From IMG/VR virus record IMGVR_UViG_3300046787_000286, positions 150,007-214,006 of that record: a stretch of DNA of 64,000 nt. One strand, given 5' to 3'. The notes beneath the pieces were generated by a model. It made no database searches, was not told where the DNA came from, and was given only the letters and a program-made list of their open reading frames with translations. Numbering within the stretch: position 1 is the stretch's first letter; every line of letters begins with the position of its first letter. The translations under genes were made by a program, and so were the position numbers. Below are positions 17,730 through 52,197 of the stretch, one piece after another.

Positions 17730-19256
17730 TTACTTGTTGATCAGGTGTCGCACAGCTTCTAATTCAGGAATGTAGTCACCAAGTTGACTGTTTCTGGCTG
17801 CGTCCAATTTATCATTGAATTCAAAAAACTTACGCAACTTCTCTACATCAAAGGTAGGATTTGTTTTGTAATACTCGTACATAGAATCAATTGCGCTCTT
17901 GTTAGATTTGCCATCGCTCATGTACATATTGGTTTTCATACACCTAGACAAACTGTCTAACGCCATCTCAACATTGGGATGGATAAACGGGCTTTGATGT
18001 TCGACATAATTTATCTGTACGTACACCGAAGTGTCTGGCAATTCTCGATCTAAAAATTCATAAAGCAAATGTAAGTTCGTAACATTGTAAATTCCTGGAA
18101 CACAGTTGATAGATATACGATGCCCATGGCTTTTTAATAATTTTATATTTTTAATAATAGTATCAAAGTTACTGCCCCAACGCCAATAATCGTTCACACG
18201 CCCGTATCCGTCTAAACTTATGCTGAAATTTACTACAGAAAAGTGATTGCACAGATTTAAAAAGCGTTGACTAATTTTTTGTCCGTTTGTGCCAAACGTG
18301 AGTTCAAAATCTGTTTTGTTTGCTGCTATACATCTTTCCATGAAAGTGAGAACTTCCGGGATAACAGTTGGATCGCCACCGGTCAAGTATATCCGTGACA
18401 ATGGTGACAATGTATTGATGTCGATCCTATCAATATTGGAATATTGGTACTGCTCGGTATCATTTACCCACTTACTAAAAGTGATGTTGTGCTGTTTAAA
18501 TTCAGCTTCAATCCGATGACTGTATGCTGGACGGCAACCTCTGCACATTAGATTGCACTTGTTGCTCAGTCGCAATTCATATAGATAAGGATGAGTAATC
18601 TTGTCGAGATCCTCAAACGATTGGATGTTTAATTTATTAATCCAATCCCGAGTTTCAAATTGCCGATAGCTCTCAATACCTTTATCTTCGTATTCTTCGT
18701 AGCAAAACCCGCAGTGCTCAGGTATGCGTTCTCCTGCTAACATTTTTTGTCTAATAGCCTGATAATCAGGATTGGTCTTCCAGTCAACAATTTTATCAGG
18801 GGTTGTTACATTTGCCCTGGCTCTGGGACAAAGGCGTGTGGTGCCATTTTCCTCAGTGAAATTTATCCATGGGTAAATGCAAAAACTTTTATTCTCGGTT
18901 GTTAGTTTGTCAATTGAGTGAGCAGCTAGCACATTGGCATTGTCTTTGTATACTACATCATAGCCGCGTTGGTCAATCTCTTCCATGATCTTTATAGTAC
19001 TCAACAATGGCTTCCAATTAGTCCATTGACTAATCGGCTGATCTAATAGAACAATTTGATCAAAGTAATCAGCCAACTTGACTATAGCGCCAAACGGTAT
19101 GTCTAAAACAGTAGTATGATAAAATCCATCATGGGCAGGCACAAAGTCTGCCTGACTAATAAGACCGTGATTAATTGTGTTATGCGTTGCGGCCAACACA
19201 CTTACACGACGATCGGTATCTTCATCGTTGTTTCCTAAATATAAAACTTTGTTCAT
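17730..19256 (-). CDS. radical SAM enzyme with N-terminal twitch/SPASM-like Cys cluster
   Basis: CIYPW...C...CGFC; CNLMCRGC; GGDP; TNG; SLDG. Confidence 0.9.
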   Translation of the reverse strand: MNKVLYLGNNDEDTDRRVSVLAATHNTINHGLISQADFVPAHDGFYHTTVLDIPFGAIVKLADYFDQIVLLDQPISQWTNWKPLLSTIKIMEEIDQRGYDVVYKDNANVLAAHSIDKLTTENKSFCIYPWINFTEENGTTRLCPRARANVTTPDKIVDWKTNPDYQAIRQKMLAGERIPEHCGFCYEEYEDKGIESYRQFETRDWINKLNIQSFEDLDKITHPYLYELRLSNKCNLMCRGCRPAYSHRIEAEFKQHNITFSKWVNDTEQYQYSNIDRIDINTLSPLSRIYLTGGDPTVIPEVLTFMERCIAANKTDFELTFGTNGQKISQRFLNLCNHFSVVNFSISLDGYGRVNDYWRWGSNFDTIIKNIKLLKSHGHRISINCVPGIYNVTNLHLLYEFLDRELPDTSVYVQINYVEHQSPFIHPNVEMALDSLSRCMKTNMYMSDGKSNKSAIDSMYEYYKTNPTFDVEKLRKFFEFNDKLDAARNSQLGDYIPELEAVRHLINK

Positions 19257-20398: not shown

Positions 20399-20427
20399 TC
20401 GAACTCCTTTTGTTTCTGTATGTGTAT

Positions 20428-20507
20428 ATTATAGCAAATTGGGCAATTCTGGTCAACCAAAAAAATACCCTGCCAACTAGCAGGGTTTTGTAACACTTTG
20501 GGTTTAA
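20428..20507 (-). promoter_or_regulatory. palindrome-terminator-promoter cassette
   Basis: TTGACC-17-TATAAT (20428-20456), hairpin 20467-20486, degenerate palindrome 20490-20507. Confidence 0.85.
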
Positions 20508-23554: not shown

Positions 23555-23596
23555 ATGTGTATATTATAGCAAATCGGGCAATTTTGGTCAACCAAA
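23555..23596. repeat. 42-bp exact repeat containing a sigma70 promoter (copy 1)
   Basis: ATGTGTATATTATAGCAAATCGGGCAATTTTGGTCAACCAAA, identical at 23823-23864 and 52111-52152. Confidence 0.95.
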
Positions 23597-23824
23597 TGCT
23601 TTAACTAATCCTGTGAGTCCAAGTCCCAAGGCCACAAGATTCACTGCCATTTGTGGTTTATTTGCAACACGAACAGTCCATGTCAGGAACAATATTGTGC
23701 CTACAAAAAATGCAAGAATATTGTAAGGATAGGCTGCAGGTCCCACAGCGTTGAGACTGTGCCCTGCTATGATAAACACAGCACCGGCCCACTGTAAAAT
23801 TTCGTTTGTATCTAATTTCTTCAT
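23588..23824 (-). CDS. 3-TM small membrane protein (predicted leaderless), bounded by direct repeats
   Basis: ATG lies in repeat copy 2; TGA lies in the -35 box of copy 1. Confidence 0.75.
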   Translation of the reverse strand: MKKLDTNEILQWAGAVFIIAGHSLNAVGPAAYPYNILAFFVGTILFLTWTVRVANKPQMAVNLVALGLGLTGLVKAFG

Positions 23825-23911
23825 GTGTATATTATAGCAAATCGGGCAATTTTGGTCAACCAAAAAAATACCCCGCATTTCTGCAGGGTTAATGTAACAC
23901 TTGAGTATTAC
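23823..23911 (-). promoter_or_regulatory. palindrome-terminator-promoter cassette (contains repeat copy 2)
   Basis: TTGACC-17-TATAAT, hairpin 23870-23889, GTAACACTTGAGTATTAC at 23894-23911. Confidence 0.9.
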
Positions 23912-24117
23912 TTTTTAAACTCGTGTTCCACGTAGTACTTGACTAGGCTTTGCTGGCACATAGTAATCAAGTCACCGTGGGAGTCCGGCACAATGAAACG
24001 ATATGGGCATCGTCCCCAAGTGCCATGTTTTGTAAATTGCGAATACCAACGTCGATGTTCTTTGTTGGCAGGATCAAATACTGTCCAGGGACGGGCTTTG
24101 AAATGCAATACGCTCAT
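23908..24117 (-). CDS. hypothetical protein
   Basis: FDPANKEHR...WGRCPYRF; AAGGAG RBS. Confidence 0.7.
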   Translation of the reverse strand: MSVLHFKARPWTVFDPANKEHRRWYSQFTKHGTWGRCPYRFIVPDSHGDLITMCQQSLVKYYVEHEFKK

Positions 24118-24125
24118 GCTACTCC

Positions 24126-24686
24126 TTAGTTGATTACAAGATGTTTAAAATATTCAAAATGTTGTTCTAGTGTCCATGTTTCTGGGTCAATGGCGGTACC
24201 GTCATGTGTTTCAAACTTGGCCTCAAACACTTGACTGTATCGACGGAATGGCAACCACATGTCTGGTGTATGACTTGCCCAACCTGCTTCCTTGAGTTGT
24301 GCATGTTTTGCACGGCTCAATTTCACCGTAGGAGCGTTCAGTGCTTGCTCTACAGAGATAACACCGGCCAACAAAAGGTCACGGATACGTGCGGCAGGAA
24401 TTAGATGCTCAAAATCTGTTTCTGCGTCTGCACCTTGCTCATGATAGTGAGCGCCCATGCTGTCACGTTGCTTGATGCAGTACTCGTGATATCGACGAAG
24501 TTTTTCGTCAATGTCGTTGCGAAGCTCTCGCAACAGTTGCTGATCATTGCGCACAGCCTTGTATTCATCAACCAAGCGAGTTAGATGATTGGTACAGTGT
24601 TGAGACACAGTTTTGTATGTAGCAGTACTGCGTTGAGTCTTGCCGTACACAGGAGCAGTAAATTGTTGGAGAGATTCTTTTAACAT
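24126..24686 (-). CDS. hypothetical protein with HNH-like EH-x-I-P motif
   Basis: DFEHLIPA...H..L..AGW...P....PFRRY. Confidence 0.65.
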   Translation of the reverse strand: MLKESLQQFTAPVYGKTQRSTATYKTVSQHCTNHLTRLVDEYKAVRNDQQLLRELRNDIDEKLRRYHEYCIKQRDSMGAHYHEQGADAETDFEHLIPAARIRDLLLAGVISVEQALNAPTVKLSRAKHAQLKEAGWASHTPDMWLPFRRYSQVFEAKFETHDGTAIDPETWTLEQHFEYFKHLVIN

Positions 24687-25102
24687 TAGATAACCTCAAA
24701 AAGATTTGGGTCCAGGTCAACAACATTTGAATAACGATTGTGTTGATGCCCACTGTCTACTGTTACACGAGCATGGCATACTCGGCACAAACATTCAATG
24801 TTACTAGGATCAGTATTCATCTTATTGCCATCAATGTGATTCACGTCAATTTGAGAAGGATGAGTAATTGTAGTAGTGCAAGCAAATCCATGATGCGTGT
24901 CTCGATTCTCGCAACCACGCTTTAATTTCCAAGCATCAAACTCTGCTTTACGAGCTCCTCGATGGTCAGGGCAAGCCTGCATCCATTTAAAGCCGGGTCC
25001 TCCGTGGTTTAACTTAGAATACTTTTTATGGTAAGATACAAGATTATTGCATCCATCCATGACACATTTTGGTGCCCAGTTCTTTGAAATAGTTGCCTTC
25101 AT
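24686..25102 (-). CDS. HNH endonuclease
   Basis: IDVNHIDGNKMNTDPSNIECLCRVCH; additional Cys pairs. Confidence 0.85.
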   Translation of the reverse strand: MKATISKNWAPKCVMDGCNNLVSYHKKYSKLNHGGPGFKWMQACPDHRGARKAEFDAWKLKRGCENRDTHHGFACTTTITHPSQIDVNHIDGNKMNTDPSNIECLCRVCHARVTVDSGHQHNRYSNVVDLDPNLFEVI

Positions 25103-25103
25103 G

Positions 25104-26150
25104 TTACGCCTCAGGGAAAAGACCGTCTGCAATATTGCCAGCCTCGACACCCATTTTAGCACCTTCGCCGTGGTAGGGCAAGTTCAATGAGCCACCGTTG
25201 CGTAAATGCAACTCACGCAAGAAGTTTGCCATTGCGCTGGGCGCTGACCAAGTTGCACCTGGGTTCACGTGTTCCCACTGTACTTTGGCTTTGGCGTGGA
25301 TCAAGGCACTTGACTTGAATGTGGGCTTGATGCTTTCCAGCAAAGTCTTCATCCAACCTGCAGGCAGTTTTTCGTTGGGGTTTGTGCTAGAGATGCGGTG
25401 CAACTCATACAAGCCAATAAAACAACCCTGATCAATTTCTTCTTGCAGTGGGAAAGTGTCTTTGATTGCGCTGAGAATGTTGAACAGCACTGTGCCGCTT
25501 TCGTCTACTTCGATGCCTTTTTGTGCATACTTAAAGTGACTCATAAAGTAGTCATTGTCGCCACGCAGGTTGTCACTAGCACGAGAGCCTTTGTCTTGTA
25601 AGTCAATGCCGCAAGCATCAAATTGATCTTGCATTGTGCGAGCACGAACGTTTTTAATGTCACGGCTACCGTTTTTATAGCGCACCAGAGCATTACGATG
25701 CAAATCGCCAGGGCCTAAGCGTTTGACGCCGGTGTCGTTGAGCATTTCGAATGCATAACTTGCAAAGTTAGGGTCGTTAGTTTCCACCACAGCACAAGGA
25801 ACTTCCGCAAAGCCCAGGATAGCCGAGGCAATAGTACGATGTTGACCATCATATGTATCCGTTTGCTTTTTACCGTTCAGGCGGCATGCGCTTACAGGTG
25901 AGCAGATACGTGGATCCCACTTTTTCATGATGTTGATAATATGCTTGTGCAATACATCACGTTGAACTTCGTAGTCAATACTCAGTTCATCAATAGGAAC
26001 CATTGCAGTATTAGGGAAGGCAAACTTGCTGGCTTTGGCTGCTGCTCGCCATGTATCGAGTTCTTTTTGTGTCACACCATAGTGTGCTTTGAGCTGGGCT
26101 TCAACTTCGCGAGCCACATCAATGAGTTTACGAGTAAGGCGTTTTGCCAT
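25104..26150 (-). CDS. ParB/Srx-fold protein with DGQHR motif
   Basis: IDYEVQR...YDGQHRT...F..LN..G.K. Confidence 0.8.
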   Translation of the reverse strand: MAKRLTRKLIDVAREVEAQLKAHYGVTQKELDTWRAAAKASKFAFPNTAMVPIDELSIDYEVQRDVLHKHIINIMKKWDPRICSPVSACRLNGKKQTDTYDGQHRTIASAILGFAEVPCAVVETNDPNFASYAFEMLNDTGVKRLGPGDLHRNALVRYKNGSRDIKNVRARTMQDQFDACGIDLQDKGSRASDNLRGDNDYFMSHFKYAQKGIEVDESGTVLFNILSAIKDTFPLQEEIDQGCFIGLYELHRISSTNPNEKLPAGWMKTLLESIKPTFKSSALIHAKAKVQWEHVNPGATWSAPSAMANFLRELHLRNGGSLNLPYHGEGAKMGVEAGNIADGLFPEA

Positions 26151-26226
26151 GATAATTTCCTTTTAAATGATGCACAATGCATCGGGTTGTAAGCTGCCTA
26201 GTACCATACTTGGCTTGCTTATGAGT

Positions 26227-26284
26227 ATTATATAGCAAATACCCTATGCTGTCAACCTCTAAATGTGTAGTACTATCGTATTAC
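26227..26284 (-). promoter_or_regulatory. early promoter with palindrome
   Basis: TTGACA-17-TATAAT; GTAGTACTATCGTATTAC at 26267-26284. Confidence 0.85.
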
Positions 26285-27068: not shown

Positions 27069-27308
27069 TCAACCGCCCCATTTTAGCAGAAAAGCACAGT
27101 AATCACGCTCGTTGTCGAAGTAAAATAGGTAGCGACCATCTGCGTGATCCGAACTAACTTGTATCAATTGCCAACGCCATTCGCCTTGCATTTCTGATTC
27201 CTTGCACCAGGCGATCACTGAGTCCAGGCCGCCAAATGGTTGATGGATTTCGACTGCATGTTTAAAACTATCTTTTGCTCTTACAACTAGGTTGTCTAAA
27301 ACATTCAT
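27069..27308 (-). CDS. dispersed member of the F-x-L-[RK]-W small-protein family
   Basis: VIAWC...W.W...FYFDNERDYCAFLLKW. Confidence 0.8.
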   Translation of the reverse strand: MNVLDNLVVRAKDSFKHAVEIHQPFGGLDSVIAWCKESEMQGEWRWQLIQVSSDHADGRYLFYFDNERDYCAFLLKWGG

Positions 27309-28129
27309 AAGTTAGGGGTTAGTTCCATTTCTGGTAGCTGGTTATCTATAACATGATTATACATAACCTTCTCAACTGTGCGTATACGGTCTTGTTTTGT
27401 TTGGGACCCTAATACCACAATAATGTATTGTTGTTGCTTTTGTTCAACTACTAATCCCAAACAAAAACCTGCTCGAGACGTGAATCCAGTTTTGCTCACA
27501 ACAATGTTATCAAACTCAAACAGCAACGGAGAATTTGTATTTTTTAAATTTACAGTTCTAACACGTTTTTTAAATTGAGCTTCAACAGCCACTTGCTTGC
27601 GTGTGGTTACTTCTTGAATAATCCAATATCCTGAAGCAGTTTCCATCATGCTAACAACTTCTGTTGCTGTACTTATATTGTTAGCACTGAGGCCAGTAGG
27701 ATCTTCGAATCGAGTGTTCTTCATGCCCCATTCACGGGCTTGTTGATTCATTGCTGCAATAAACGCAGATCTCCCGCCTGGGTAATCGTTTGCTAGTGTT
27801 TCAGCCGCAGCATTGTCCGATCTAACCAGCATGGCTTGTAGCAGTTGCCAGCGATTATAAGTTTGTTTGGGCAAATGACTGCCCACACGACCATCTAACT
27901 TTAACCTGCGTTGTAGATTTTTATCGTAGTCCAACGCAACCATTGCGGTCATAATTTTAGTCACTGATGCAATTGGGCGAACTGCATCTTTGTTATGCGA
28001 GTATTCAATACGATCTTTTGCCGAATTGTAAACAATTACACTGGGTTCTGCTTTTTGAACTCGAGGTTTTGCTACTGCTGTGCCTGCTACTAAAATTAGT
28101 GTTATGAAGAAATATTTTATTATGCCCAT
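27305..28129 (-). CDS. D-alanyl-D-alanine carboxy/endopeptidase (peptidase S11, PBP7-like)
   Basis: Signal peptide; IASVTK (SxxK), SDN (SxN), KTG. Confidence 0.93.
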   Translation of the reverse strand: MGIIKYFFITLILVAGTAVAKPRVQKAEPSVIVYNSAKDRIEYSHNKDAVRPIASVTKIMTAMVALDYDKNLQRRLKLDGRVGSHLPKQTYNRWQLLQAMLVRSDNAAAETLANDYPGGRSAFIAAMNQQAREWGMKNTRFEDPTGLSANNISTATEVVSMMETASGYWIIQEVTTRKQVAVEAQFKKRVRTVNLKNTNSPLLFEFDNIVVSKTGFTSRAGFCLGLVVEQKQQQYIIVVLGSQTKQDRIRTVEKVMYNHVIDNQLPEMELTPNL

Positions 28130-28347
28130 TTTAACCTGTAAAAACTAGCCATAGCTGGATCTGCAAACTCAAATATAACTTGGCTATCAGATTCCGGGGT
28201 CGAGCTAAAACTATCGCTGTATTTAACGGGCTGAAATCTCCATGTATAATCCTGATCTACTACTAGACCTGTCCGATCCAGATCTATCTTTAATGCAATA
28301 GCTTCAGCAGCGGATAGTTTAGTAATAGTAAGAGAGTTCAGTGTCAA
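28120..28347 (-). CDS. dispersed member of the F-x-L-[RK]-W family (start uncertain)
   Basis: DYTWRF...VIFEFADPAMASFYRLKWA; probable TTG start. Confidence 0.65.
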   Translation of the reverse strand: MTLNSLTITKLSAAEAIALKIDLDRTGLVVDQDYTWRFQPVKYSDSFSSTPESDSQVIFEFADPAMASFYRLKWA

Positions 28348-28735
28348 AATCTTGTACCAAATGATCAAACGGTTGATTGAAATATCTATACACAGAACGA
28401 ATGTCATCCACATAACACTTGCTAGGGTTGCCTTCGCGAAAGGATGCCATTTCGTAAAAGAAAAACTTTTGCTTGCTTTGGCGCATTTGGCGCTTGGTGT
28501 AGTAAGATGGAAAACCTTCAAACGAATCCAGTGAGCGCTCGCATTCAGGAGTAATATCCCACAGGATTCCCCAAACAGATTCGCCAGGGCTAGGCTCCAC
28601 TGTTGCATGAGAGTAGAACTTTAGTTTCCAGCCTTGCAAAACAAACGGGCGTGGATTAGTGGCACCAGGGCAACGGCGTGCCATGCTAGCTTGACTCATA
28701 TTTGCCCCGTAGGCAAAATACAATTTCTTGGTCAT
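28319..28735 (-). CDS. gamma-glutamylcyclotransferase (AIG2-like)
   Basis: YFAYGANM...RCPGA...LDSFEGFP..Y. Confidence 0.88.
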   Translation of the reverse strand: MTKKLYFAYGANMSQASMARRCPGATNPRPFVLQGWKLKFYSHATVEPSPGESVWGILWDITPECERSLDSFEGFPSYYTKRQMRQSKQKFFFYEMASFREGNPSKCYVDDIRSVYRYFNQPFDHLVQDFDTELSYYY

Positions 28736-29471: not shown

Positions 29472-30041
29472 ATGATACCATACACATACTTGATCGGTTG
29501 GAGTAAAGAAAATAAATTTTATTACGGAGCGAGATGGGCAAAAAATTGCCACCCCTCTGATCTGTGGAAAACATACTTTACCTCTTCAACACATGTTAAA
29601 AAATATCGCAATCTCTACGGTGATCCTGATATTATTCAAATTAGAAAAACATTTAGTGACGTCGATCAGTGCAGAATTTATGAGCAAAAAACTCTACGTC
29701 GAATTAATGTATTATACAATAATAAATGGTTAAACAAGAACATAAACGGAAGATTCCTTCCGTATGGTCCTCAAACAGAAGAACACAAAGCTGCGAGATC
29801 GATTGCCCTTAAAGGCCATGCACCAACATTCACTAGAAAACATTCAGCAGAATCCTTAGAAAAAATGCGTTTAGCTCAACTTGGAAAACCTAAGTCTGCG
29901 GAGCATATCCTTGCTATGCGTAGCCGTCCTCAAGATACTGCGAAACTTGTTTGTCCACATTGTGGTAAAGAAGGCGATTATAAGAATATGAAACGTTGGC
30001 ATATGGACAGGTGCAAACATCAATCCCAGAGGCCGGAATAA
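29472..30041 (+). mobile_element. free-standing homing endonuclease (GIY-YIG-like with NUMOD3 repeats and C-terminal Zn ribbon)
   Basis: YTYLI..FYYG.R..YFTSS; HSAESLEKMR; CPHCGKEG..NMKRWH..C; antisense insertion with TAAATA promoter. Confidence 0.8.
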
Positions 30042-42545: not shown

Positions 42546-42812
42546 TCAATTTACCACTTTGTAGCTGTCTTTTTCGAAGAACAACCCGTATACTTTAGTA
42601 TTAACTCTGCGTTCTGTTCCCACACGCCAATCTGAGCAGTGATGGGTTCCGCCTGACCCAGCCCAAGCACCGCAGTAGGAGTAGGATACTGTATAGGGCT
42701 CGCTTACAACTTCGTAAGTGCCAAACACATCATTGACAATGCTAGTACCCACAATTCCAAAAACTGTTAGTACACAAGCCACGATGCAGAAGTTTGTTTG
42801 TTTTGCTGTCAT
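42546..42812 (-). CDS. membrane-anchored protein (predicted leaderless) between two promoter repeats
   Basis: N-terminal TM, C...C pair; ATG 6 nt after TATAAT. Confidence 0.65.
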   Translation of the reverse strand: MTAKQTNFCIVACVLTVFGIVGTSIVNDVFGTYEVVSEPYTVSYSYCGAWAGSGGTHHCSDWRVGTERRVNTKVYGLFFEKDSYKVVN

Positions 42813-42818
42813 GTGTAT

Positions 42819-42876
42819 ATTATAGCAAAACGGAAAATTCTGGTCAACCAAGCAAAATGTAATACTTTTGTAATAC
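42819..42876 (-). promoter_or_regulatory. early promoter with palindrome
   Basis: TTGACC-17-TATAAT; GTAATACTTTTGTAATAC at 42859-42876. Confidence 0.85.
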
Positions 42877-43612: not shown

Positions 43613-43854
43613 GGTTCTAACAACCAACCCTGCCCGCTTGCTCGATGATACCAGCGGTAAAAAGGCTCAGATATAATTAATTTTCCATCTACAGCCATAT
43701 ACGAGTATTTGGGCAGTATTTCTATTCTATCTATTACAACCGCATCGTTGGCAGAAAATGATAATATATCGTGAAGGCCAGCTTCATGTTCTATTCCATT
43801 TATAACAACAGTTAACGTTGGCTCAGTAGCCAGCAGTTCTGAAAAGTTCTTCAT
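43606..43854 (-). CDS. hypothetical protein
   Basis: PFYRWYH..SGQGWLL.P; coupled to the radical SAM gene. Confidence 0.65.
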   Translation of the reverse strand: MKNFSELLATEPTLTVVINGIEHEAGLHDILSFSANDAVVIDRIEILPKYSYMAVDGKLIISEPFYRWYHRASGQGWLLEPQ

Positions 43855-45094
43855 ATTCGGGTAGGTAGGTTAAGACAGAGTTTCCTCTGTTGGATTCAAG
43901 CTGCTTCAAGTATTTGACCAAGTCTGGCAAGCGCCAACTTTCATCTGGTTCAGTACTTAGATAATTTACGTAACTTTGTAAGTCTTGCACCAATTGTGCT
44001 TGCACAGTGTTGGGATTTCTAATGTTCACTATTTGATCGCTTGTGATCATATGAGCATCGATCCAGGCTTGCATTTTATCTATAATCTGTTGTCTATAAC
44101 TCATTGGCAATACTGAAGGTTTTAGAACTTCCGGTCTATATAAAAAATTACAGCTTTCAACGATAATGCTATGTGCTAGTGCATAATCGTATATAGGAAG
44201 CAGTGTATGAACAGTCAAACAAGTAGGCGTTGTTCTAAATTGCATTAACCATTTGAGTTCATTGGCTACTGTTTTCCATCGTTCTAGATTTTCAAACACT
44301 GTTGGCAAGCATACTGGCCAACGAACATAGTCGTTGATAATGCTAAAACTTTCAACACTGAATCCAAGATTAACACCCTTGAATTGTTTAAGTAAATCAA
44401 CAATATCATTGTCCCATACTGACAGATTAGTAGTGAACCCAATGGTTGCATTTGTGTTTAGCCCTGCGTCAACTAGTGCTTGTAGGATAATTCTAAACGC
44501 CGGGGTAATTAATGTTTCGCCGCCAATAAAGTGCAAATACTGTATATGTGGACTTTGCTTTAATGTGTTGATAAATTTCTGAACTAATAAAGGATCATCG
44601 CTCCAGTTAGCAGGTGGCATCTCAGTGATGAACCCAATTTTTTTCCATTCAGCAGCAAGGCGTGAACTTGACTCTGGTCTGCAAAAGACGCAGGCACTGT
44701 TACAAAAATTTCCCAAATCTATTTGCCAATCTTGTGGGTACTGGCTACACTTACTGTCGCCAAATGTAGACACCCATGGGCTGCTTGCTAACGTTTTTTC
44801 AAACTCATCTAGTCTAACTCCAACTTTGAGTAACTGTTTTTGCCTGCCGCTGATTTTATCATGCTTTTCCATGCTGCGACAAGTGTGGCATCCTGCAGGG
44901 CTTGCGCCTTGCAGTAACTCATTTCTCAGGGGTTGCATTATTGTTTGAAAATAATCAACTGGATCAATATCTCTAATATTGTGAGTGCGCGGGGATTGGG
45001 CCCAGCGACAATACTCAAAATCACCAGAATTTGTTATTCTCATGTGAATCCAAGGGCTTGAGCAAAAGTTATTTTTGATATTGTTCTCTGACAT
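43823..45094 (-). CDS. radical SAM enzyme with twitch-like domain
   Basis: CSSPW...YC...CHTC; CNSACVFC; GGET; TTN. Confidence 0.9.
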   Translation of the reverse strand: MSENNIKNNFCSSPWIHMRITNSGDFEYCRWAQSPRTHNIRDIDPVDYFQTIMQPLRNELLQGASPAGCHTCRSMEKHDKISGRQKQLLKVGVRLDEFEKTLASSPWVSTFGDSKCSQYPQDWQIDLGNFCNSACVFCRPESSSRLAAEWKKIGFITEMPPANWSDDPLLVQKFINTLKQSPHIQYLHFIGGETLITPAFRIILQALVDAGLNTNATIGFTTNLSVWDNDIVDLLKQFKGVNLGFSVESFSIINDYVRWPVCLPTVFENLERWKTVANELKWLMQFRTTPTCLTVHTLLPIYDYALAHSIIVESCNFLYRPEVLKPSVLPMSYRQQIIDKMQAWIDAHMITSDQIVNIRNPNTVQAQLVQDLQSYVNYLSTEPDESWRLPDLVKYLKQLESNRGNSVLTYLPEYEELFRTAGY

Positions 45095-52110: not shown

Positions 52111-52197
52111 ATGTGTATATTATAGCAAATCGGGCAATTTTGGTCAACCAAAAGAAAAGCCCCTTGCGGGGCTCAAAATGTACTACTTGAGTATTAC
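52111..52197 (-). promoter_or_regulatory. palindrome-terminator-promoter cassette (contains repeat copy 3)
   Basis: 42-bp repeat 52111-52152, hairpin 52158-52173, GTACTACTTGAGTATTAC at 52180-52197. Confidence 0.9.

What the first reader, a model, noticed from the sequence alone, without database searches (positions are those of the whole stretch)
24126..26255. DGQHR-ParB plus HNH plus EHxIP operon resembling a split GmrSD/Dnd-type module
Seen: under its own promoter, a 348-aa QR...DGQHR protein is followed with 1-nt spacing or overlap by an HNH nuclease and an FEHLIP protein. Established: GmrSD type IV restriction enzymes pair a ParB/Srx DGQQR domain with an EHxxP HNH domain, and DndB-like proteins carry DGQHR. 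Inference: a phage-borne modification-dependent nuclease or competitor-exclusion system; the middle HNH may be a later homing insertion.
Basis: partly seen in the sequence, partly recalled or inferred. Interest (0 to 1): 0.6.

Follow-up and report, generated by a model that had tools for sequence, protein, structure and literature searches.

The report
Phage nuclease gene pair split by homing endonuclease
A freshwater giant phage carries a strongly conserved pair of genes that looks like a very distant, two-protein relative of the GmrS/GmrD DNA-cutting enzymes. The small HNH gene between them is a selfish homing endonuclease, one of at least nine unrelated genes found at this same junction in related phages.

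Summary
A perfect sigma-70 promoter is followed by a 348-aa QR/DGQHR protein, a 138-aa HNH and a 186-aa FEHLIP protein (P3), with 1-nt spacing and then a 1-nt overlap.

The 348-aa protein has a ParB/Srx fold (KorB Z 8.2) and all three DGQHR/DUF262 motifs. It passes no curated family threshold.

P3 belongs to an orphan phage family with invariant H94, R149, Y150 and H176. Its best profile alignment to real GmrSD proteins puts FEHxIP on the GmrD catalytic (E/D)HxxPQ motif (E 0.003, probability about 10%). Its best solved-structure neighbour is an HNH nickase (Z 5.0). This support is suggestive, not decisive.

The two genes are adjacent in 63 of 67 related phage contigs and in marine phages where P3 identity is only 20-25%.

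The HNH is not part of the module:
- 15 of 63 loci have the pair abutting.
- 48 of 63 carry one of at least 9 unrelated inserts.
- Insert type changes at least 32 times on a 60-tip tree.
- Metagenome contigs skip the HNH region.

Verdict: a divergent split GmrS/GmrD-like module that is a core gene pair of huge phages, plus a homing-endonuclease hotspot. Modification dependence and the biological role are untested.

The parts
26227..26255 (-). Sigma-70-type promoter TTGACA-17-TATAAT in front of the operon
   Evidence: 12 of 12 consensus match. An SD-like AAAAGGAAA precedes the ATG at 26150.
25104..26150 (-). 348-aa ParB/Srx-fold protein of the DGQHR/DUF262-like kind (GmrS-like subunit). Residues 47-143 form the ParB/Srx core; residues about 160-330 are helical with no known match.
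   Evidence: AF2 pLDDT 79. VIA: KorB Z 8.2, sulfiredoxin 7.6, PadC 7.5. Foldseek probabilities 0.87-1.0 to ParB/Noc/KorB/Srx. Invariant QR, D-x-QHR and FxxxN. hhalign to GmrSD_N gives E 1e-4 on FEMLNDTGVKRLGPGDLHRN.
24686..25102 (-). 138-aa free-standing HNH homing endonuclease inserted in the junction between the two conserved genes
   Evidence: HNH_3 and HNH sub-threshold. 13 HNH PHROGs. ZorE-type HNH 1e-6. Absent from most relatives. Only 5 homologue clusters; the two whose contigs were looked up lie in this same junction.
24126..24686 (-). 186-aa P3: orphan phage family, an N-terminal helical hairpin plus a beta-alpha-alpha-beta-alpha core with the FEH94LIP motif. Candidate His-Me (GmrD-like) nuclease subunit.
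   Evidence: AF2 pLDDT 86.6. Invariant H94, R149, Y150, H176. hhalign places FEHxIP on the GmrSD_C xEHIxPQ motif, E 0.003. Top solved-structure neighbour is the T5 SciA HNH nuclease, Z 5.0.
23908..24117 (-). 69-aa ORF, probably the last gene of the transcription unit; function unknown
   Evidence: Starts 8 nt after P3 with its own AAGGAG. Lies within about 20 nt downstream of P3 in 8 of the related loci and elsewhere or absent in the others. No family hit.
23870..23889 (-). Intrinsic-terminator-like hairpin plus T-run that ends the unit
   Evidence: 8-bp stem with 5 GC pairs, then ATTTTTTTGG. It is directly followed by the next repeated promoter element.

Best explanation
The locus is an early transcription unit driven by a host-type promoter. 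Its conserved core is two genes, not three.

The 348-aa protein has a ParB/Srx nucleotide-binding fold with the QR, DGQHR and FxxxN motifs that define the DGQHR/DUF262 (GmrS, DndB, SspE) branch. The 186-aa P3 has an (E)H-x-x-P motif at the end of a beta strand inside a beta-alpha-alpha-beta-alpha unit. This is the layout described for the GmrD/DUF1524 His-Me nuclease domain.

I infer that the two proteins form a complex. The ParB/Srx subunit would bind DNA and an NTP and gate the complex. P3 would cut or nick DNA using H94 (general base), E93 with D/H128 (metal ligands), and R149, Y150 and H176. In other words, a very divergent split GmrS/GmrD-like nuclease. Because it is a core early gene pair of this lineage, its likeliest job is to attack non-self DNA: the host chromosome or co-infecting phages.

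The 138-aa HNH between the two genes is a free-standing homing endonuclease. It has invaded the junction, rides on the operon's transcription and translational coupling, and is one of at least nine unrelated insert families that occupy this site.

Shown: gene structure, fold of the first protein, motifs, synteny, and mobility of the HNH. Inferred: the complex, the nuclease chemistry of P3, NTP control, and the biological target.
For: Anatomy.

ParB/Srx fold: the top 8 VIA hits are all ParB/Srx proteins, Z 8.2-5.2 over residues 47-143. Foldseek agrees. The three DGQHR-domain motifs named in PMC4619093 are invariant here.

hhalign against 24 natural GmrSD proteins:
- FEMLNDTGVKRLGPGDLHRN aligns with IFEtLNxRGxxLsxxDLlKN: score 42.1, E 1e-4, probability 58%. 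The maximum of 60 block shuffles was 30.5.
- A second alignment puts YDGQHRT on IDGQQRLT, E 0.01.
- A marine homologue gets a sub-threshold PF03235 hit.

P3:
- The model is confident, pLDDT 86.6.
- The invariant residues are polar and catalytic in type (H94, R149, Y150, H176; E93 and P97 at 90% or more).
- hhalign aligns FEHxIP with xEHIxPQ and LSKxxD with GNLxLLxxxN of GmrSD_C: score 28.3, E 0.003. This is above the reversed control (16.1) and all 60 shuffles (maximum 25.5).
- The top hit among 48,161 PDB representatives is the T5 SciA HNH endonuclease: Z 5.0, 93 of 121 residues aligned. The ScoMcrA HNH region scores Z 3.6.

Partnership:
- The genes are adjacent and co-oriented in 63 of 67 loci. 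In insert-free loci the gap is -8 to +4 nt.
- They are still adjacent in marine contigs where the ParB-like protein is 33-39% and P3 about 20-25% identical.
- Complex prediction gives ipSAE 0.32 against a best control of 0.00. This is 'weak support': 58 of 80 solved complexes and 2 of 110 mismatched pairs reach the mark. At 0.60 or under, only 7 of those 80 solved complexes and both mismatches passed. The runs agree in at least 70% of contacts, and partner pLDDT is 90.

HNH mobility:
- 15 of 63 loci have no insert; 48 of 63 have one of at least 9 unrelated ORF families, all co-oriented.
- Insert type needs at least 32 changes on a 60-tip tree. Well-supported sister pairs carry different inserts.
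- There are only 5 homologue clusters for the HNH, against about 1000 for each flank.
- The two HNH homologues looked up lie in the same junction.
- In three other freshwater metagenomes summed contig depth is 0-5 over the HNH against roughly 20-400 on the flanking genes. Contig joints skip 24680 to 25100-25129.
Against: No curated model recognises either conserved protein as GmrSD, DndB, ParBc or HNH:
- Pfam, NCBIfam and PADLOC give nothing relevant at E <= 1.
- PF03235 and PF07510 find nothing in the genome at E <= 10.
- None of 60 diverse P3 relatives hits any nuclease family.

For P3 the profile-profile probability is only 9-10%. Single GmrSD sequences give nothing. N117 and H128, which would complete an H-N-H/N triad, are not conserved in distant members. 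The GmrD motifs L(G/A)NLxLLxxxN and NxxFxxKK are not recognisable.

The structural evidence for P3 is below the level the tool calls reliable: Z 5.0, with helical-hairpin matches at Z 4.5-4.8 just behind it. Foldseek found nothing.

No ParB-P3 fusion protein exists among 145 family representatives.

In 4 fragmentary contigs P3 has no ParB-like gene nearby.

No DNA-modification genes were found that would give the phage a self/non-self mark, but the record is only 62% complete.

The complex prediction is weak.
Confidence: 0.5

Rival explanations
1. The pair is an NTP-dependent DNA-binding or regulatory module, not a nuclease. The ParB/Srx protein would act as a clamp or switch, like KorB, Noc or the DndB regulator. 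P3 would be a small partner that locks or modulates it, as KorA does for KorB, controlling phage early/middle transcription or DNA organisation.
For: The closest solved structures are KorB, PadC, ParB and Noc. P3 has a long helical hairpin typical of dimerising adaptor proteins and no significant match to any nuclease family. The unit sits among early genes behind a host-type promoter. DndB, the classic DGQHR protein, is a regulator (PMC4507180 title and abstract).
Against: The invariant residues of P3 are His, Arg, Tyr and Glu rather than a hydrophobic interface. The best profile alignment falls on the catalytic motif of GmrSD_C, not elsewhere. No HTH or ParB-type C-terminal dimerisation domain was detected in the 348-aa protein. 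Its sequence motifs match the DUF262 branch, not the GERR CTP-clamp branch.
Confidence: 0.25
2. The pair is a helper for DNA modification. The ParB-like ATPase would assist a DNA-modifying enzyme, as DpdB does for DpdA or DndB for the dnd genes, and P3 would be a new modification or recognition subunit.
For: From my own knowledge, DGQHR-type ParB proteins occur in the Dnd and Dpd modification systems; the Dnd link is stated in PMC4619093. In marine relatives a Methyltransf_24/TylF-like gene lies two genes downstream. Two radical-SAM genes lie in the window.
Against: The 214-kb record has no TGT/DpdA, no N6/N4 methyltransferase and no C5 methyltransferase. Its thymidylate-synthase homologue scores like an ordinary ThyA, 353 bits. 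The methyltransferase neighbour is not conserved in the freshwater clade.
Confidence: 0.1
3. All three genes (ParB-like, HNH and P3) form one three-component system in which the HNH is the working nuclease.
For: Tight spacing and overlap within one operon. The HNH is the only gene here with recognisable nuclease signatures.
Against: The HNH is absent from 52 of the 63 related loci that keep both flanking genes. Fifteen of the 63 have the two genes abutting, and other loci carry unrelated ORFs in its place. Very close sister genomes differ in the insert. Natural populations mostly lack it.
Confidence: 0.03

Closest known systems
GmrS/GmrD of the E. coli CT596 prophage and fused GmrSD (type IV modification-dependent restriction; DUF262 + DUF1524; PMC4619093)
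   Same: Two separate proteins in the same order: ParB/Srx-fold subunit first, (E/D)HxxP His-Me-like subunit second. QR, DGQ(Q/H)R and FxxxN motifs are present in the first. The second has the (hydrophobic)(E/D)H(I/L/V)xP motif and a beta-alpha-alpha-beta-alpha layout. Phage-borne. Profile alignments fall on the homologous motifs.
   Different: Neither protein reaches any curated GmrSD threshold. The roughly 110-residue helical insert between DGQQR and FExLN is missing. P3 lacks the NLxLLxxxN and NxxFxxKK motifs and has its own invariant R149, Y150 and H176. Here the pair is a conserved core gene pair of lytic-looking huge phages rather than a sporadic defence gene. Modification dependence is untested.
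TgvAB of Vibrio cholerae (two-gene GmrSD-like type IV system; PMC11014532)
   Same: Two overlapping, translationally coupled genes that are both required in TgvAB. The first is DUF262-only. The 8-bp overlap resembles the -8 to +4 nt junctions of insert-free loci here.
   Different: TgvB carries both DUF262 and DUF1524, whereas P3 has no ParB/Srx part. TgvAB is a bacterial island system with demonstrated activity against glucosyl-5hmC phages.
DndB / DGQHR-domain proteins (TIGR03187, PF14072)
   Same: The motif triad QR, DGQHR and FxxxN on a ParB/Srx fold.
   Different: No HMM hit. No dnd genes nearby. The partner is a candidate nuclease rather than a sulfur-modification complex.
Free-standing homing endonucleases between conserved genes of T4-like phages (seg, mob and HNH genes; intronless homing) - from my own knowledge
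   Same: A small nuclease ORF is wedged between two highly conserved genes and co-oriented with them. It shows presence/absence polymorphism among close relatives, and its phylogeny is incongruent with the backbone.
   Different: The number of unrelated families at one junction is large: at least 9, and two loci have two in tandem. They include window-type HNH, EndoVII-like HNH, an MvaI/BcnI-like ORF and several with no recognisable domain.
Phage T5 SciA HNH endonuclease (PDB 9qgx)
   Same: Best solved-structure neighbour of the P3 core: Z 5.0, rmsd 3.4 A, 93 of 121 residues aligned, model residues 54-157. The deposited mutant is H42A, presumably the catalytic His.
   Different: Only 10% identity, and Z is below the tool's reliability range. 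No sequence relation was detectable.

Membership tests
GmrSD_N / DUF262 (PF03235) | ParB/Srx fold | tested here: met
   VIA Z 8.2-5.2 to KorB, Srx, PadC, serine kinase, pNOB8 ParB, Atu1540 and SbnI over residues 47-143. Foldseek probabilities 0.87-1.0.
GmrSD_N / DUF262 (PF03235) | QR pair, (I/V)DGQQR and FxxxN motifs (PMC4619093) | tested here: met
   Q63-R64, D101-G/A-Q-H-R105 and F134-E-M-L-N138 are invariant or nearly so in 15 homologues. The variant is DGQHR/DAQHR, not DGQQR.
GmrSD_N / DUF262 (PF03235) | Score above the curated Pfam threshold | tested here: not met
   No hit at E <= 1. No match in the genome at E <= 10. A marine homologue reaches only 15.6 bits against a cut-off of 33.2.
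GmrSD_N / DUF262 (PF03235) | Profile-profile similarity to natural GmrSD proteins | tested here: inconclusive
   hhalign score 42.1, E 1e-4, probability 58% on the FExLN...DLxxN motif. A second alignment on DGQ(H/Q)R gives E 0.01. The maximum of 60 shuffles was 30.5.
GmrSD_C / DUF1524 (PF07510), His-Me finger | (I/L/V)(E/D)H(I/L/V)xPQ motif | tested here: met
   F-E93-H94-L-I-P97, with H94 invariant and E93 and P97 at 90% or more in 60 members. The Q is absent.
GmrSD_C / DUF1524 (PF07510), His-Me finger | L(G/A)NLxLLxxxN and NxxFxxKK motifs (the two Asn of E/D-H-N-N) | tested here: not met
   N117 is conserved only in close relatives. Position 128 is H, D or N. No NxxFxxKK motif is present.
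GmrSD_C / DUF1524 (PF07510), His-Me finger | Score above the curated threshold, or any nuclease HMM hit | tested here: not met
   Nothing for P3, for 60 relatives, or in the genome at E <= 10.
GmrSD_C / DUF1524 (PF07510), His-Me finger | beta-beta-alpha-Me core with His at the end of the first strand | tested here: inconclusive
   The model has strand 90-94 ending in E-H, helices 98-106 and 112-116, strand 120-124 and helix 125-133. This is the same order as the GmrD prediction. The best PDB neighbour is an HNH nuclease, but at Z 5.0. Model coordinates could not be inspected.
GmrSD_C / DUF1524 (PF07510), His-Me finger | Metal-dependent DNA cleavage | not testable with these tools
   Needs biochemistry.
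DGQHR domain / DndB (TIGR03187, PF14072) | HMM match and association with dnd genes | tested here: not met
   No Pfam or NCBIfam hit at E <= 1. No dnd-like neighbours.
Chromosome/plasmid ParB (ParBc PF02195, CTP clamp) | ParBc HMM, GERR CTP motif, HTH and C-terminal dimerisation domain, ParA partner | tested here: not met
   No PF02195 hit; only phrog_1033 at 1.9e-5. The motif is DGQHR, not GERR. The C-terminal half has no ParB-like match. No ParA-like neighbour.
HNH endonuclease (middle gene) | HNH motif and HMM | tested here: met
   NHIDGN...N...CxxCH is present in the sequence. HNH_3 scores 21.5 bits against a cut-off of 24.8, so sub-threshold. 13 HNH PHROGs down to 1e-5. ZorE-type HNH 1e-6 and homing-endonuclease models 1.4e-5 in PADLOC.
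Free-standing homing endonuclease gene | Presence/absence at one site among close relatives, next to conserved genes, distribution incongruent with the backbone tree | tested here: met
   Found in 11 of 63 loci. The two homologues whose contigs were looked up lie in the same junction. 10 changes for 11 carriers on the tree. Metagenome contigs skip it.
Free-standing homing endonuclease gene | Cleaves the insert-free allele near the insertion site | not testable with these tools
   Needs an in vitro cleavage or co-infection assay.

The most novel reading that the evidence does not exclude
The ParB/Srx protein and P3 together form a previously unrecognised, sequence-orphan branch of NTP-gated two-subunit nucleases. 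A whole lineage of freshwater huge phages, and distant marine relatives, would use it as a core early weapon that tells host or rival DNA from its own by a cue other than the known GmrSD/SspE modifications. Its high conservation would then explain why its internal junction is such a crowded homing-endonuclease landing site.
Probability: 0.2. Interest if true: 0.7.

Novelty: new variant of a known kind. Interest (0 to 1): 0.52.

Why it matters
GmrSD-type enzymes are known as bacterial or prophage defences against modified phage DNA. A remote two-protein relative kept as a core early gene pair by environmental huge phages would point to an offensive or housekeeping use of this chemistry. It would also add an annotation for two large orphan families: about 1000 clusters at 90% identity each, labelled 'hypothetical' where a source gives any name.

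The junction is also a clean natural experiment in selfish-gene ecology. At least nine unrelated inserts compete for one 0-4-nt site, with turnover nearly as fast as random on the backbone tree. This offers candidate site-specific nucleases and a model for intronless homing outside T4-like phages.

Tried and rejected
Searches that found nothing useful:
- Megablast and tblastn of the region and of both conserved proteins, of the 1334-aa neighbour, and of marine P3 and ParB homologues against 50,697 phage records. There was no match, except that a marine ParB homologue hit the early 'ParB-like partition protein' genes of Staphylococcus phages 85 and StB12 at 28-31%.
- PDB sequence-profile searches with both families gave only noise.
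- Foldseek PDB search for P3 returned only helical-hairpin noise. The pdb_via search returned the same, apart from the ScoMcrA HNH region at Z 3.6.
- ESM Atlas feature and shape searches returned only unnamed phage clusters.
- The BAR-domain hit of P3 (E 5.7e-4, below threshold) covers the helical hairpin. I rejected it as coiled-coil-like noise.
- A3 against single GmrSD sequences by hhalign gave nothing.
The genome-contig scan for the UTI89 GmrSD gave only 2 loci.
- Short contigs of remote P3 members were uninformative.
- A search for a ParB-P3 fusion among 145 representatives found none.
- A search for a second copy of the HNH in the genome found none.
- A terminase (PF03237) was not found in the record, so the phage group could not be placed.
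- No RNA run holds the locus, so expression is untested.
- The 382-aa ORF downstream of P3 in L060 is not ParB-like.
- The P3 profile finds nothing in Synechococcus phage S-T4, despite a BFVD fold hit.

Complex prediction gave only 'weak support': 0.32 against a best control of 0.00. The calibration counts are given under Best explanation.

No alternative genetic code was used.
Full report
**Context.** The window is the last 64 kb of a 214-kb linear IMG/VR virus record, estimated 62% complete, from a freshwater metagenome. Relatives reach 330-347 kb, so this is a huge-phage lineage. No cultured relative was found in 50,697 phage records.

**1. The observation.**
- A 12/12 consensus promoter, TTGACA-17-TATAAT, lies at 26255..26227.
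- It precedes a 348-aa ORF (26150-25104) with Q63-R64 and D101-GQHR105.
- One base after that ORF's TAA comes the ATG of a 138-aa HNH ORF (25102-24686).
- The HNH TAA shares one base with the ATG of a 186-aa ORF, P3 (24686-24126), which carries F-E-H94-L-I-P.
- I add a 69-aa ORF (24117-23908) and a terminator-like hairpin (23889-23870). The unit is therefore probably four genes.

**2. The 348-aa protein.** Curated libraries barely see it. Pfam, NCBIfam and PADLOC give nothing relevant, and PHROGs gives only phrog_1033 'ParB-like partition protein' at 1.9e-5.

An AlphaFold2 model built from 15 homologues (pLDDT 79) has a ParB/Srx core at residues 47-143. The eight best of 48,161 PDB representatives are all ParB/Srx proteins:

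| Match | Z |
|---|---|
| KorB | 8.2 |
| Sulfiredoxin (A. thaliana, 6ky4) | 7.6 |
| PadC | 7.5 |
| Sulfiredoxin (human, 1yzs) | 6.7 |
| Free serine kinase | 6.5 |
| pNOB8 ParB | 6.2 |
| Atu1540 | 5.4 |
| SbnI | 5.2 |

These come, and Foldseek agrees. The C-terminal helical half has no match.

The three motifs that Machnicka et al. give for the DGQHR domain and GmrS are a QR pair, DGQ(H/Q)R and FxxxN (PMC4619093). All three are present and invariant here.

I built an alignment of 24 natural GmrSD proteins. They came from E. coli UTI89 and from genomes in which PF07510 rings. hhalign then places FEMLNDTGVKRLGPGDLHRN on the DUF262 signature IFEtLNxRGxxLsxxDLlKN, with score 42.1, E 1e-4 and probability 58%. 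A second alignment places YDGQHRT on IDGQQRLT at E 0.01. The reversed control scores 17, and 60 block shuffles reach at most 30.5.

So this is a ParB/Srx protein of the DGQHR/DUF262 branch, below every curated threshold. It lacks the long helical insert that DUF262 has between the two motifs.

**3. P3.** This is an orphan.
- No family hit was found for it or for any of 60 relatives.
- Atlas neighbours are all unnamed phage clusters.
- A profile search of 1.84 billion representatives finds only 145 members, nearly all stand-alone proteins of 180-200 aa, with no ParB fusion.
- Across members down to about 20% identity, the invariant residues are H94, R149, Y150 and H176. R64, Y81, E93, P97 and P119 are conserved at 90% or more. 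This is an enzyme-like pattern.

The model (pLDDT 86.6) is a helical hairpin (21-72) followed by strand 90-94 ending in E-H, two helices, strand 120-124 and helix 125-133. That is the same beta-alpha-alpha-beta-alpha order predicted for GmrD.

The best solved-structure neighbour is the phage T5 SciA HNH endonuclease (Z 5.0, rmsd 3.4 A, 93 of 121 residues aligned). The HNH region of ScoMcrA appears at Z 3.6. Both values are below the range the tool calls reliable.

hhalign of the P3 family against the GmrSD alignment puts FEHvIP on tIEHIlPQ and LSKxxD on GNLtLLxxxN of GmrSD_C. The score is 28.3, E 0.003, probability 9-10%. The reversed control scores 16.1, and 60 shuffles reach at most 25.5.

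Against this reading: N117 and H128 are not conserved in distant members, the other GmrD motifs are absent, and single GmrSD sequences give nothing.

I rate 'P3 is a His-Me-type nuclease subunit' at about one in two.

**4. Linkage of the two conserved genes.** Each has about 1000 clusters (at 90% identity) of homologues in metagenomes; the 120 best listed for each are 76-100% identical.
- In 67 viral contigs that encode P3, the ParB-like gene lies directly upstream on the same strand in 63.
- It is 57-83% identical, against 28-71% for the upstream neighbour.
- In insert-free loci the stop and start are -8 to +4 nt apart, which indicates translational coupling.
- The pairing persists in marine Tara-type contigs. 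There P3 is only about 20-25% identical and the partner 33-39% (hhalign E 1e-43 to 1e-57), with 7-14-nt overlaps or two small ORFs in between.
- In four fragmentary contigs (12-31% complete) no ParB-like gene was found.
- A complex prediction gave ipSAE 0.32 (runs 0.37, 0.32, 0.21) against 0.00 for three controls. The tool calls this 'weak support': the mark is reached by 58 of 80 solved complexes and 2 of 110 mismatched pairs, but at 0.60 or under only by 7 of the 80 and by both mismatches. The runs agree in at least 70% of contacts, and partner pLDDT is 90.

**5. The HNH.** It has HNH signatures, but it is not part of the conserved module. Of the 63 loci that keep both flanking genes:
- 15 have the two genes abutting.
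- 48 have a 345-1120-nt insert with one ORF (two in L005 and L009), always co-oriented.

The inserts fall into at least nine families with no detectable similarity to each other:

| Insert family | Loci |
|---|---|
| Window-type HNH | 10, plus the window |
| EndoVII-like HNH (phrog_3322, 1e-23) | 12 |
| Unknown family c2 | 10 |
| Unknown family c3 | 9 |
| Family with weak 'endonuclease' PHROG hit (phrog_681) | 3 |
| Unknown family c9 | 3 |
| Family with weak 'endonuclease' PHROG hit (phrog_1111) | 2 |
| MvaI/BcnI-like ORF (PF15515, 2e-8) | 1 |
| Singleton (L053) | 1 |

On a tree of the concatenated flanking proteins (60 tips), insert type needs at least 32 changes. The minimum possible is 9 and the shuffled mean is 39.5. 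Strongly supported sister pairs differ in their insert: L047/L049, L034/L042, L044/L048, L006/L028 and L016/L033. Recombination that accompanies homing could blur this tree, but the sister-pair contrasts stand.

The window's HNH has only 5 homologue clusters, and the two whose contigs I looked up lie in this same junction. There is no second copy in the genome.

Contigs from three other freshwater metagenomes cover both flanking genes at roughly 20-400 summed depth but the HNH at 0-5. Their joints run from 24680 to 25100-25129, skipping the HNH region. This is the signature of free-standing homing endonucleases competing for one site.

**6. Mechanism and role.** My best reading is a two-subunit, NTP-gated nuclease of GmrS/GmrD type.
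- The ParB/Srx subunit would bind DNA and nucleotide.
- P3 would cut.

It is transcribed early from a host-type promoter and kept as a core function. I could not find a self-mark. There is no TGT/DpdA, no N6/N4 methyltransferase and no C5 methyltransferase, and the ThyA looks ordinary. The record is incomplete, however.

Host-DNA degradation, exclusion of co-infecting phages and a non-nuclease regulatory role all remain open. The regulatory rival is the strongest at about 0.25. A DNA-modification helper role is less likely, about 0.1.

**7. Comparison and novelty.** The closest known systems are the split GmrS/GmrD of the CT596 prophage and TgvAB. The resemblance lies in fold, motifs, gene order and coupling. 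Membership by any curated model is not met. I file it as a new variant of a known kind.

The homing hotspot belongs to a known class of phenomenon (T4-like seg, mob and HNH genes). What is unusual is the number of unrelated occupants.

No toxin, effector or animal-virus sequence was involved.

Noticed in passing
window 20420-20465, 23555-23600, 23823-23868, 42811-42856, 52111-52156 (all minus strand): A roughly 40-nt promoter element, GGTTGACCAAAATTGCCCGATTTGCTATAATATACACAT (extended -10), recurs five times in the window with 0-6 mismatches. In four freshwater metagenomes the bin holding the 23823 copy has summed contig depth 736-4750, against roughly 10-400 in the other bins, and many loose ends. 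It is therefore a highly repeated early-promoter cassette across this phage lineage.
   Followed up: partly
window 29472-30041 (+): A 189-aa ORF on the opposite strand to its neighbours has a sub-threshold SegE_GIY-YIG hit (E 1.2e-4, 22.7 bits against a cut-off of 25) and repeated NUMOD3-like KHSxES/KSAEH motifs. It is probably a second free-standing homing endonuclease.
   Followed up: partly
L005:2859-3925 and L009:4870-6005: Two related loci carry two different insert ORFs in tandem between the ParB-like gene and P3: EndoVII-like plus family c2 in L005, and family c11 plus c2 in L009. Successive invasions of the same junction apparently occur.
   Followed up: no
L040, L066, L060, L061: In four fragmentary contigs P3 (58-75% identical) has no ParB-like gene upstream or anywhere in the contig. 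L040 and L066 have a 760-nt stretch without any ORF of 70 aa or more in front of P3. L060 and L061 have an HNH upstream and an unrelated 382-aa ORF downstream.
   Followed up: partly
L073-L078 (marine contigs): Distant homologues of the pair sit in marine phage contigs near ribonucleotide reductase small subunit, a PAAR-like protein, DNA ligase, SufBD, ribosomal protein L12 and Vut_1 genes. One member is deposited as 'Rickettsiales bacterium' MAG protein MAI83595.1, which is probably a mis-binned phage contig.
   Followed up: no
window 17730-19256 and 43823-45094 (-): Two large radical-SAM proteins (508 and 423 aa; phrog_14086, PF04055) of unknown role lie in the same early-looking region.
   Followed up: no
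window 27305-28129 and 28319-28735 (-): The phage encodes a Peptidase_S11 (D-Ala-D-Ala carboxypeptidase-like, with an N-terminal signal-like segment) and a GGACT gamma-glutamyl cyclotransferase-like protein, a few genes upstream of the operon.
   Followed up: no
P3 model against BFVD: The best viral fold match of P3 is an uncharacterised 175-aa protein of the cultured cyanophage Synechococcus phage S-T4 (A0A385EHB6; probability 0.91, TM 0.45-0.47). The P3 family profile finds nothing in the S-T4 genome at E <= 1, so any relation lies beyond sequence detection.
   Followed up: partly
NC_007050.1 32126-33767 and NC_020490.2 2686-4414: The only cultured-phage sequence hits, found with a marine ParB homologue, are early genes of temperate Staphylococcus phages. 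These carry two ParB-like genes near each other right after the cro-like repressor: adjacent in phage 85, one small ORF apart in StB12.
   Followed up: no
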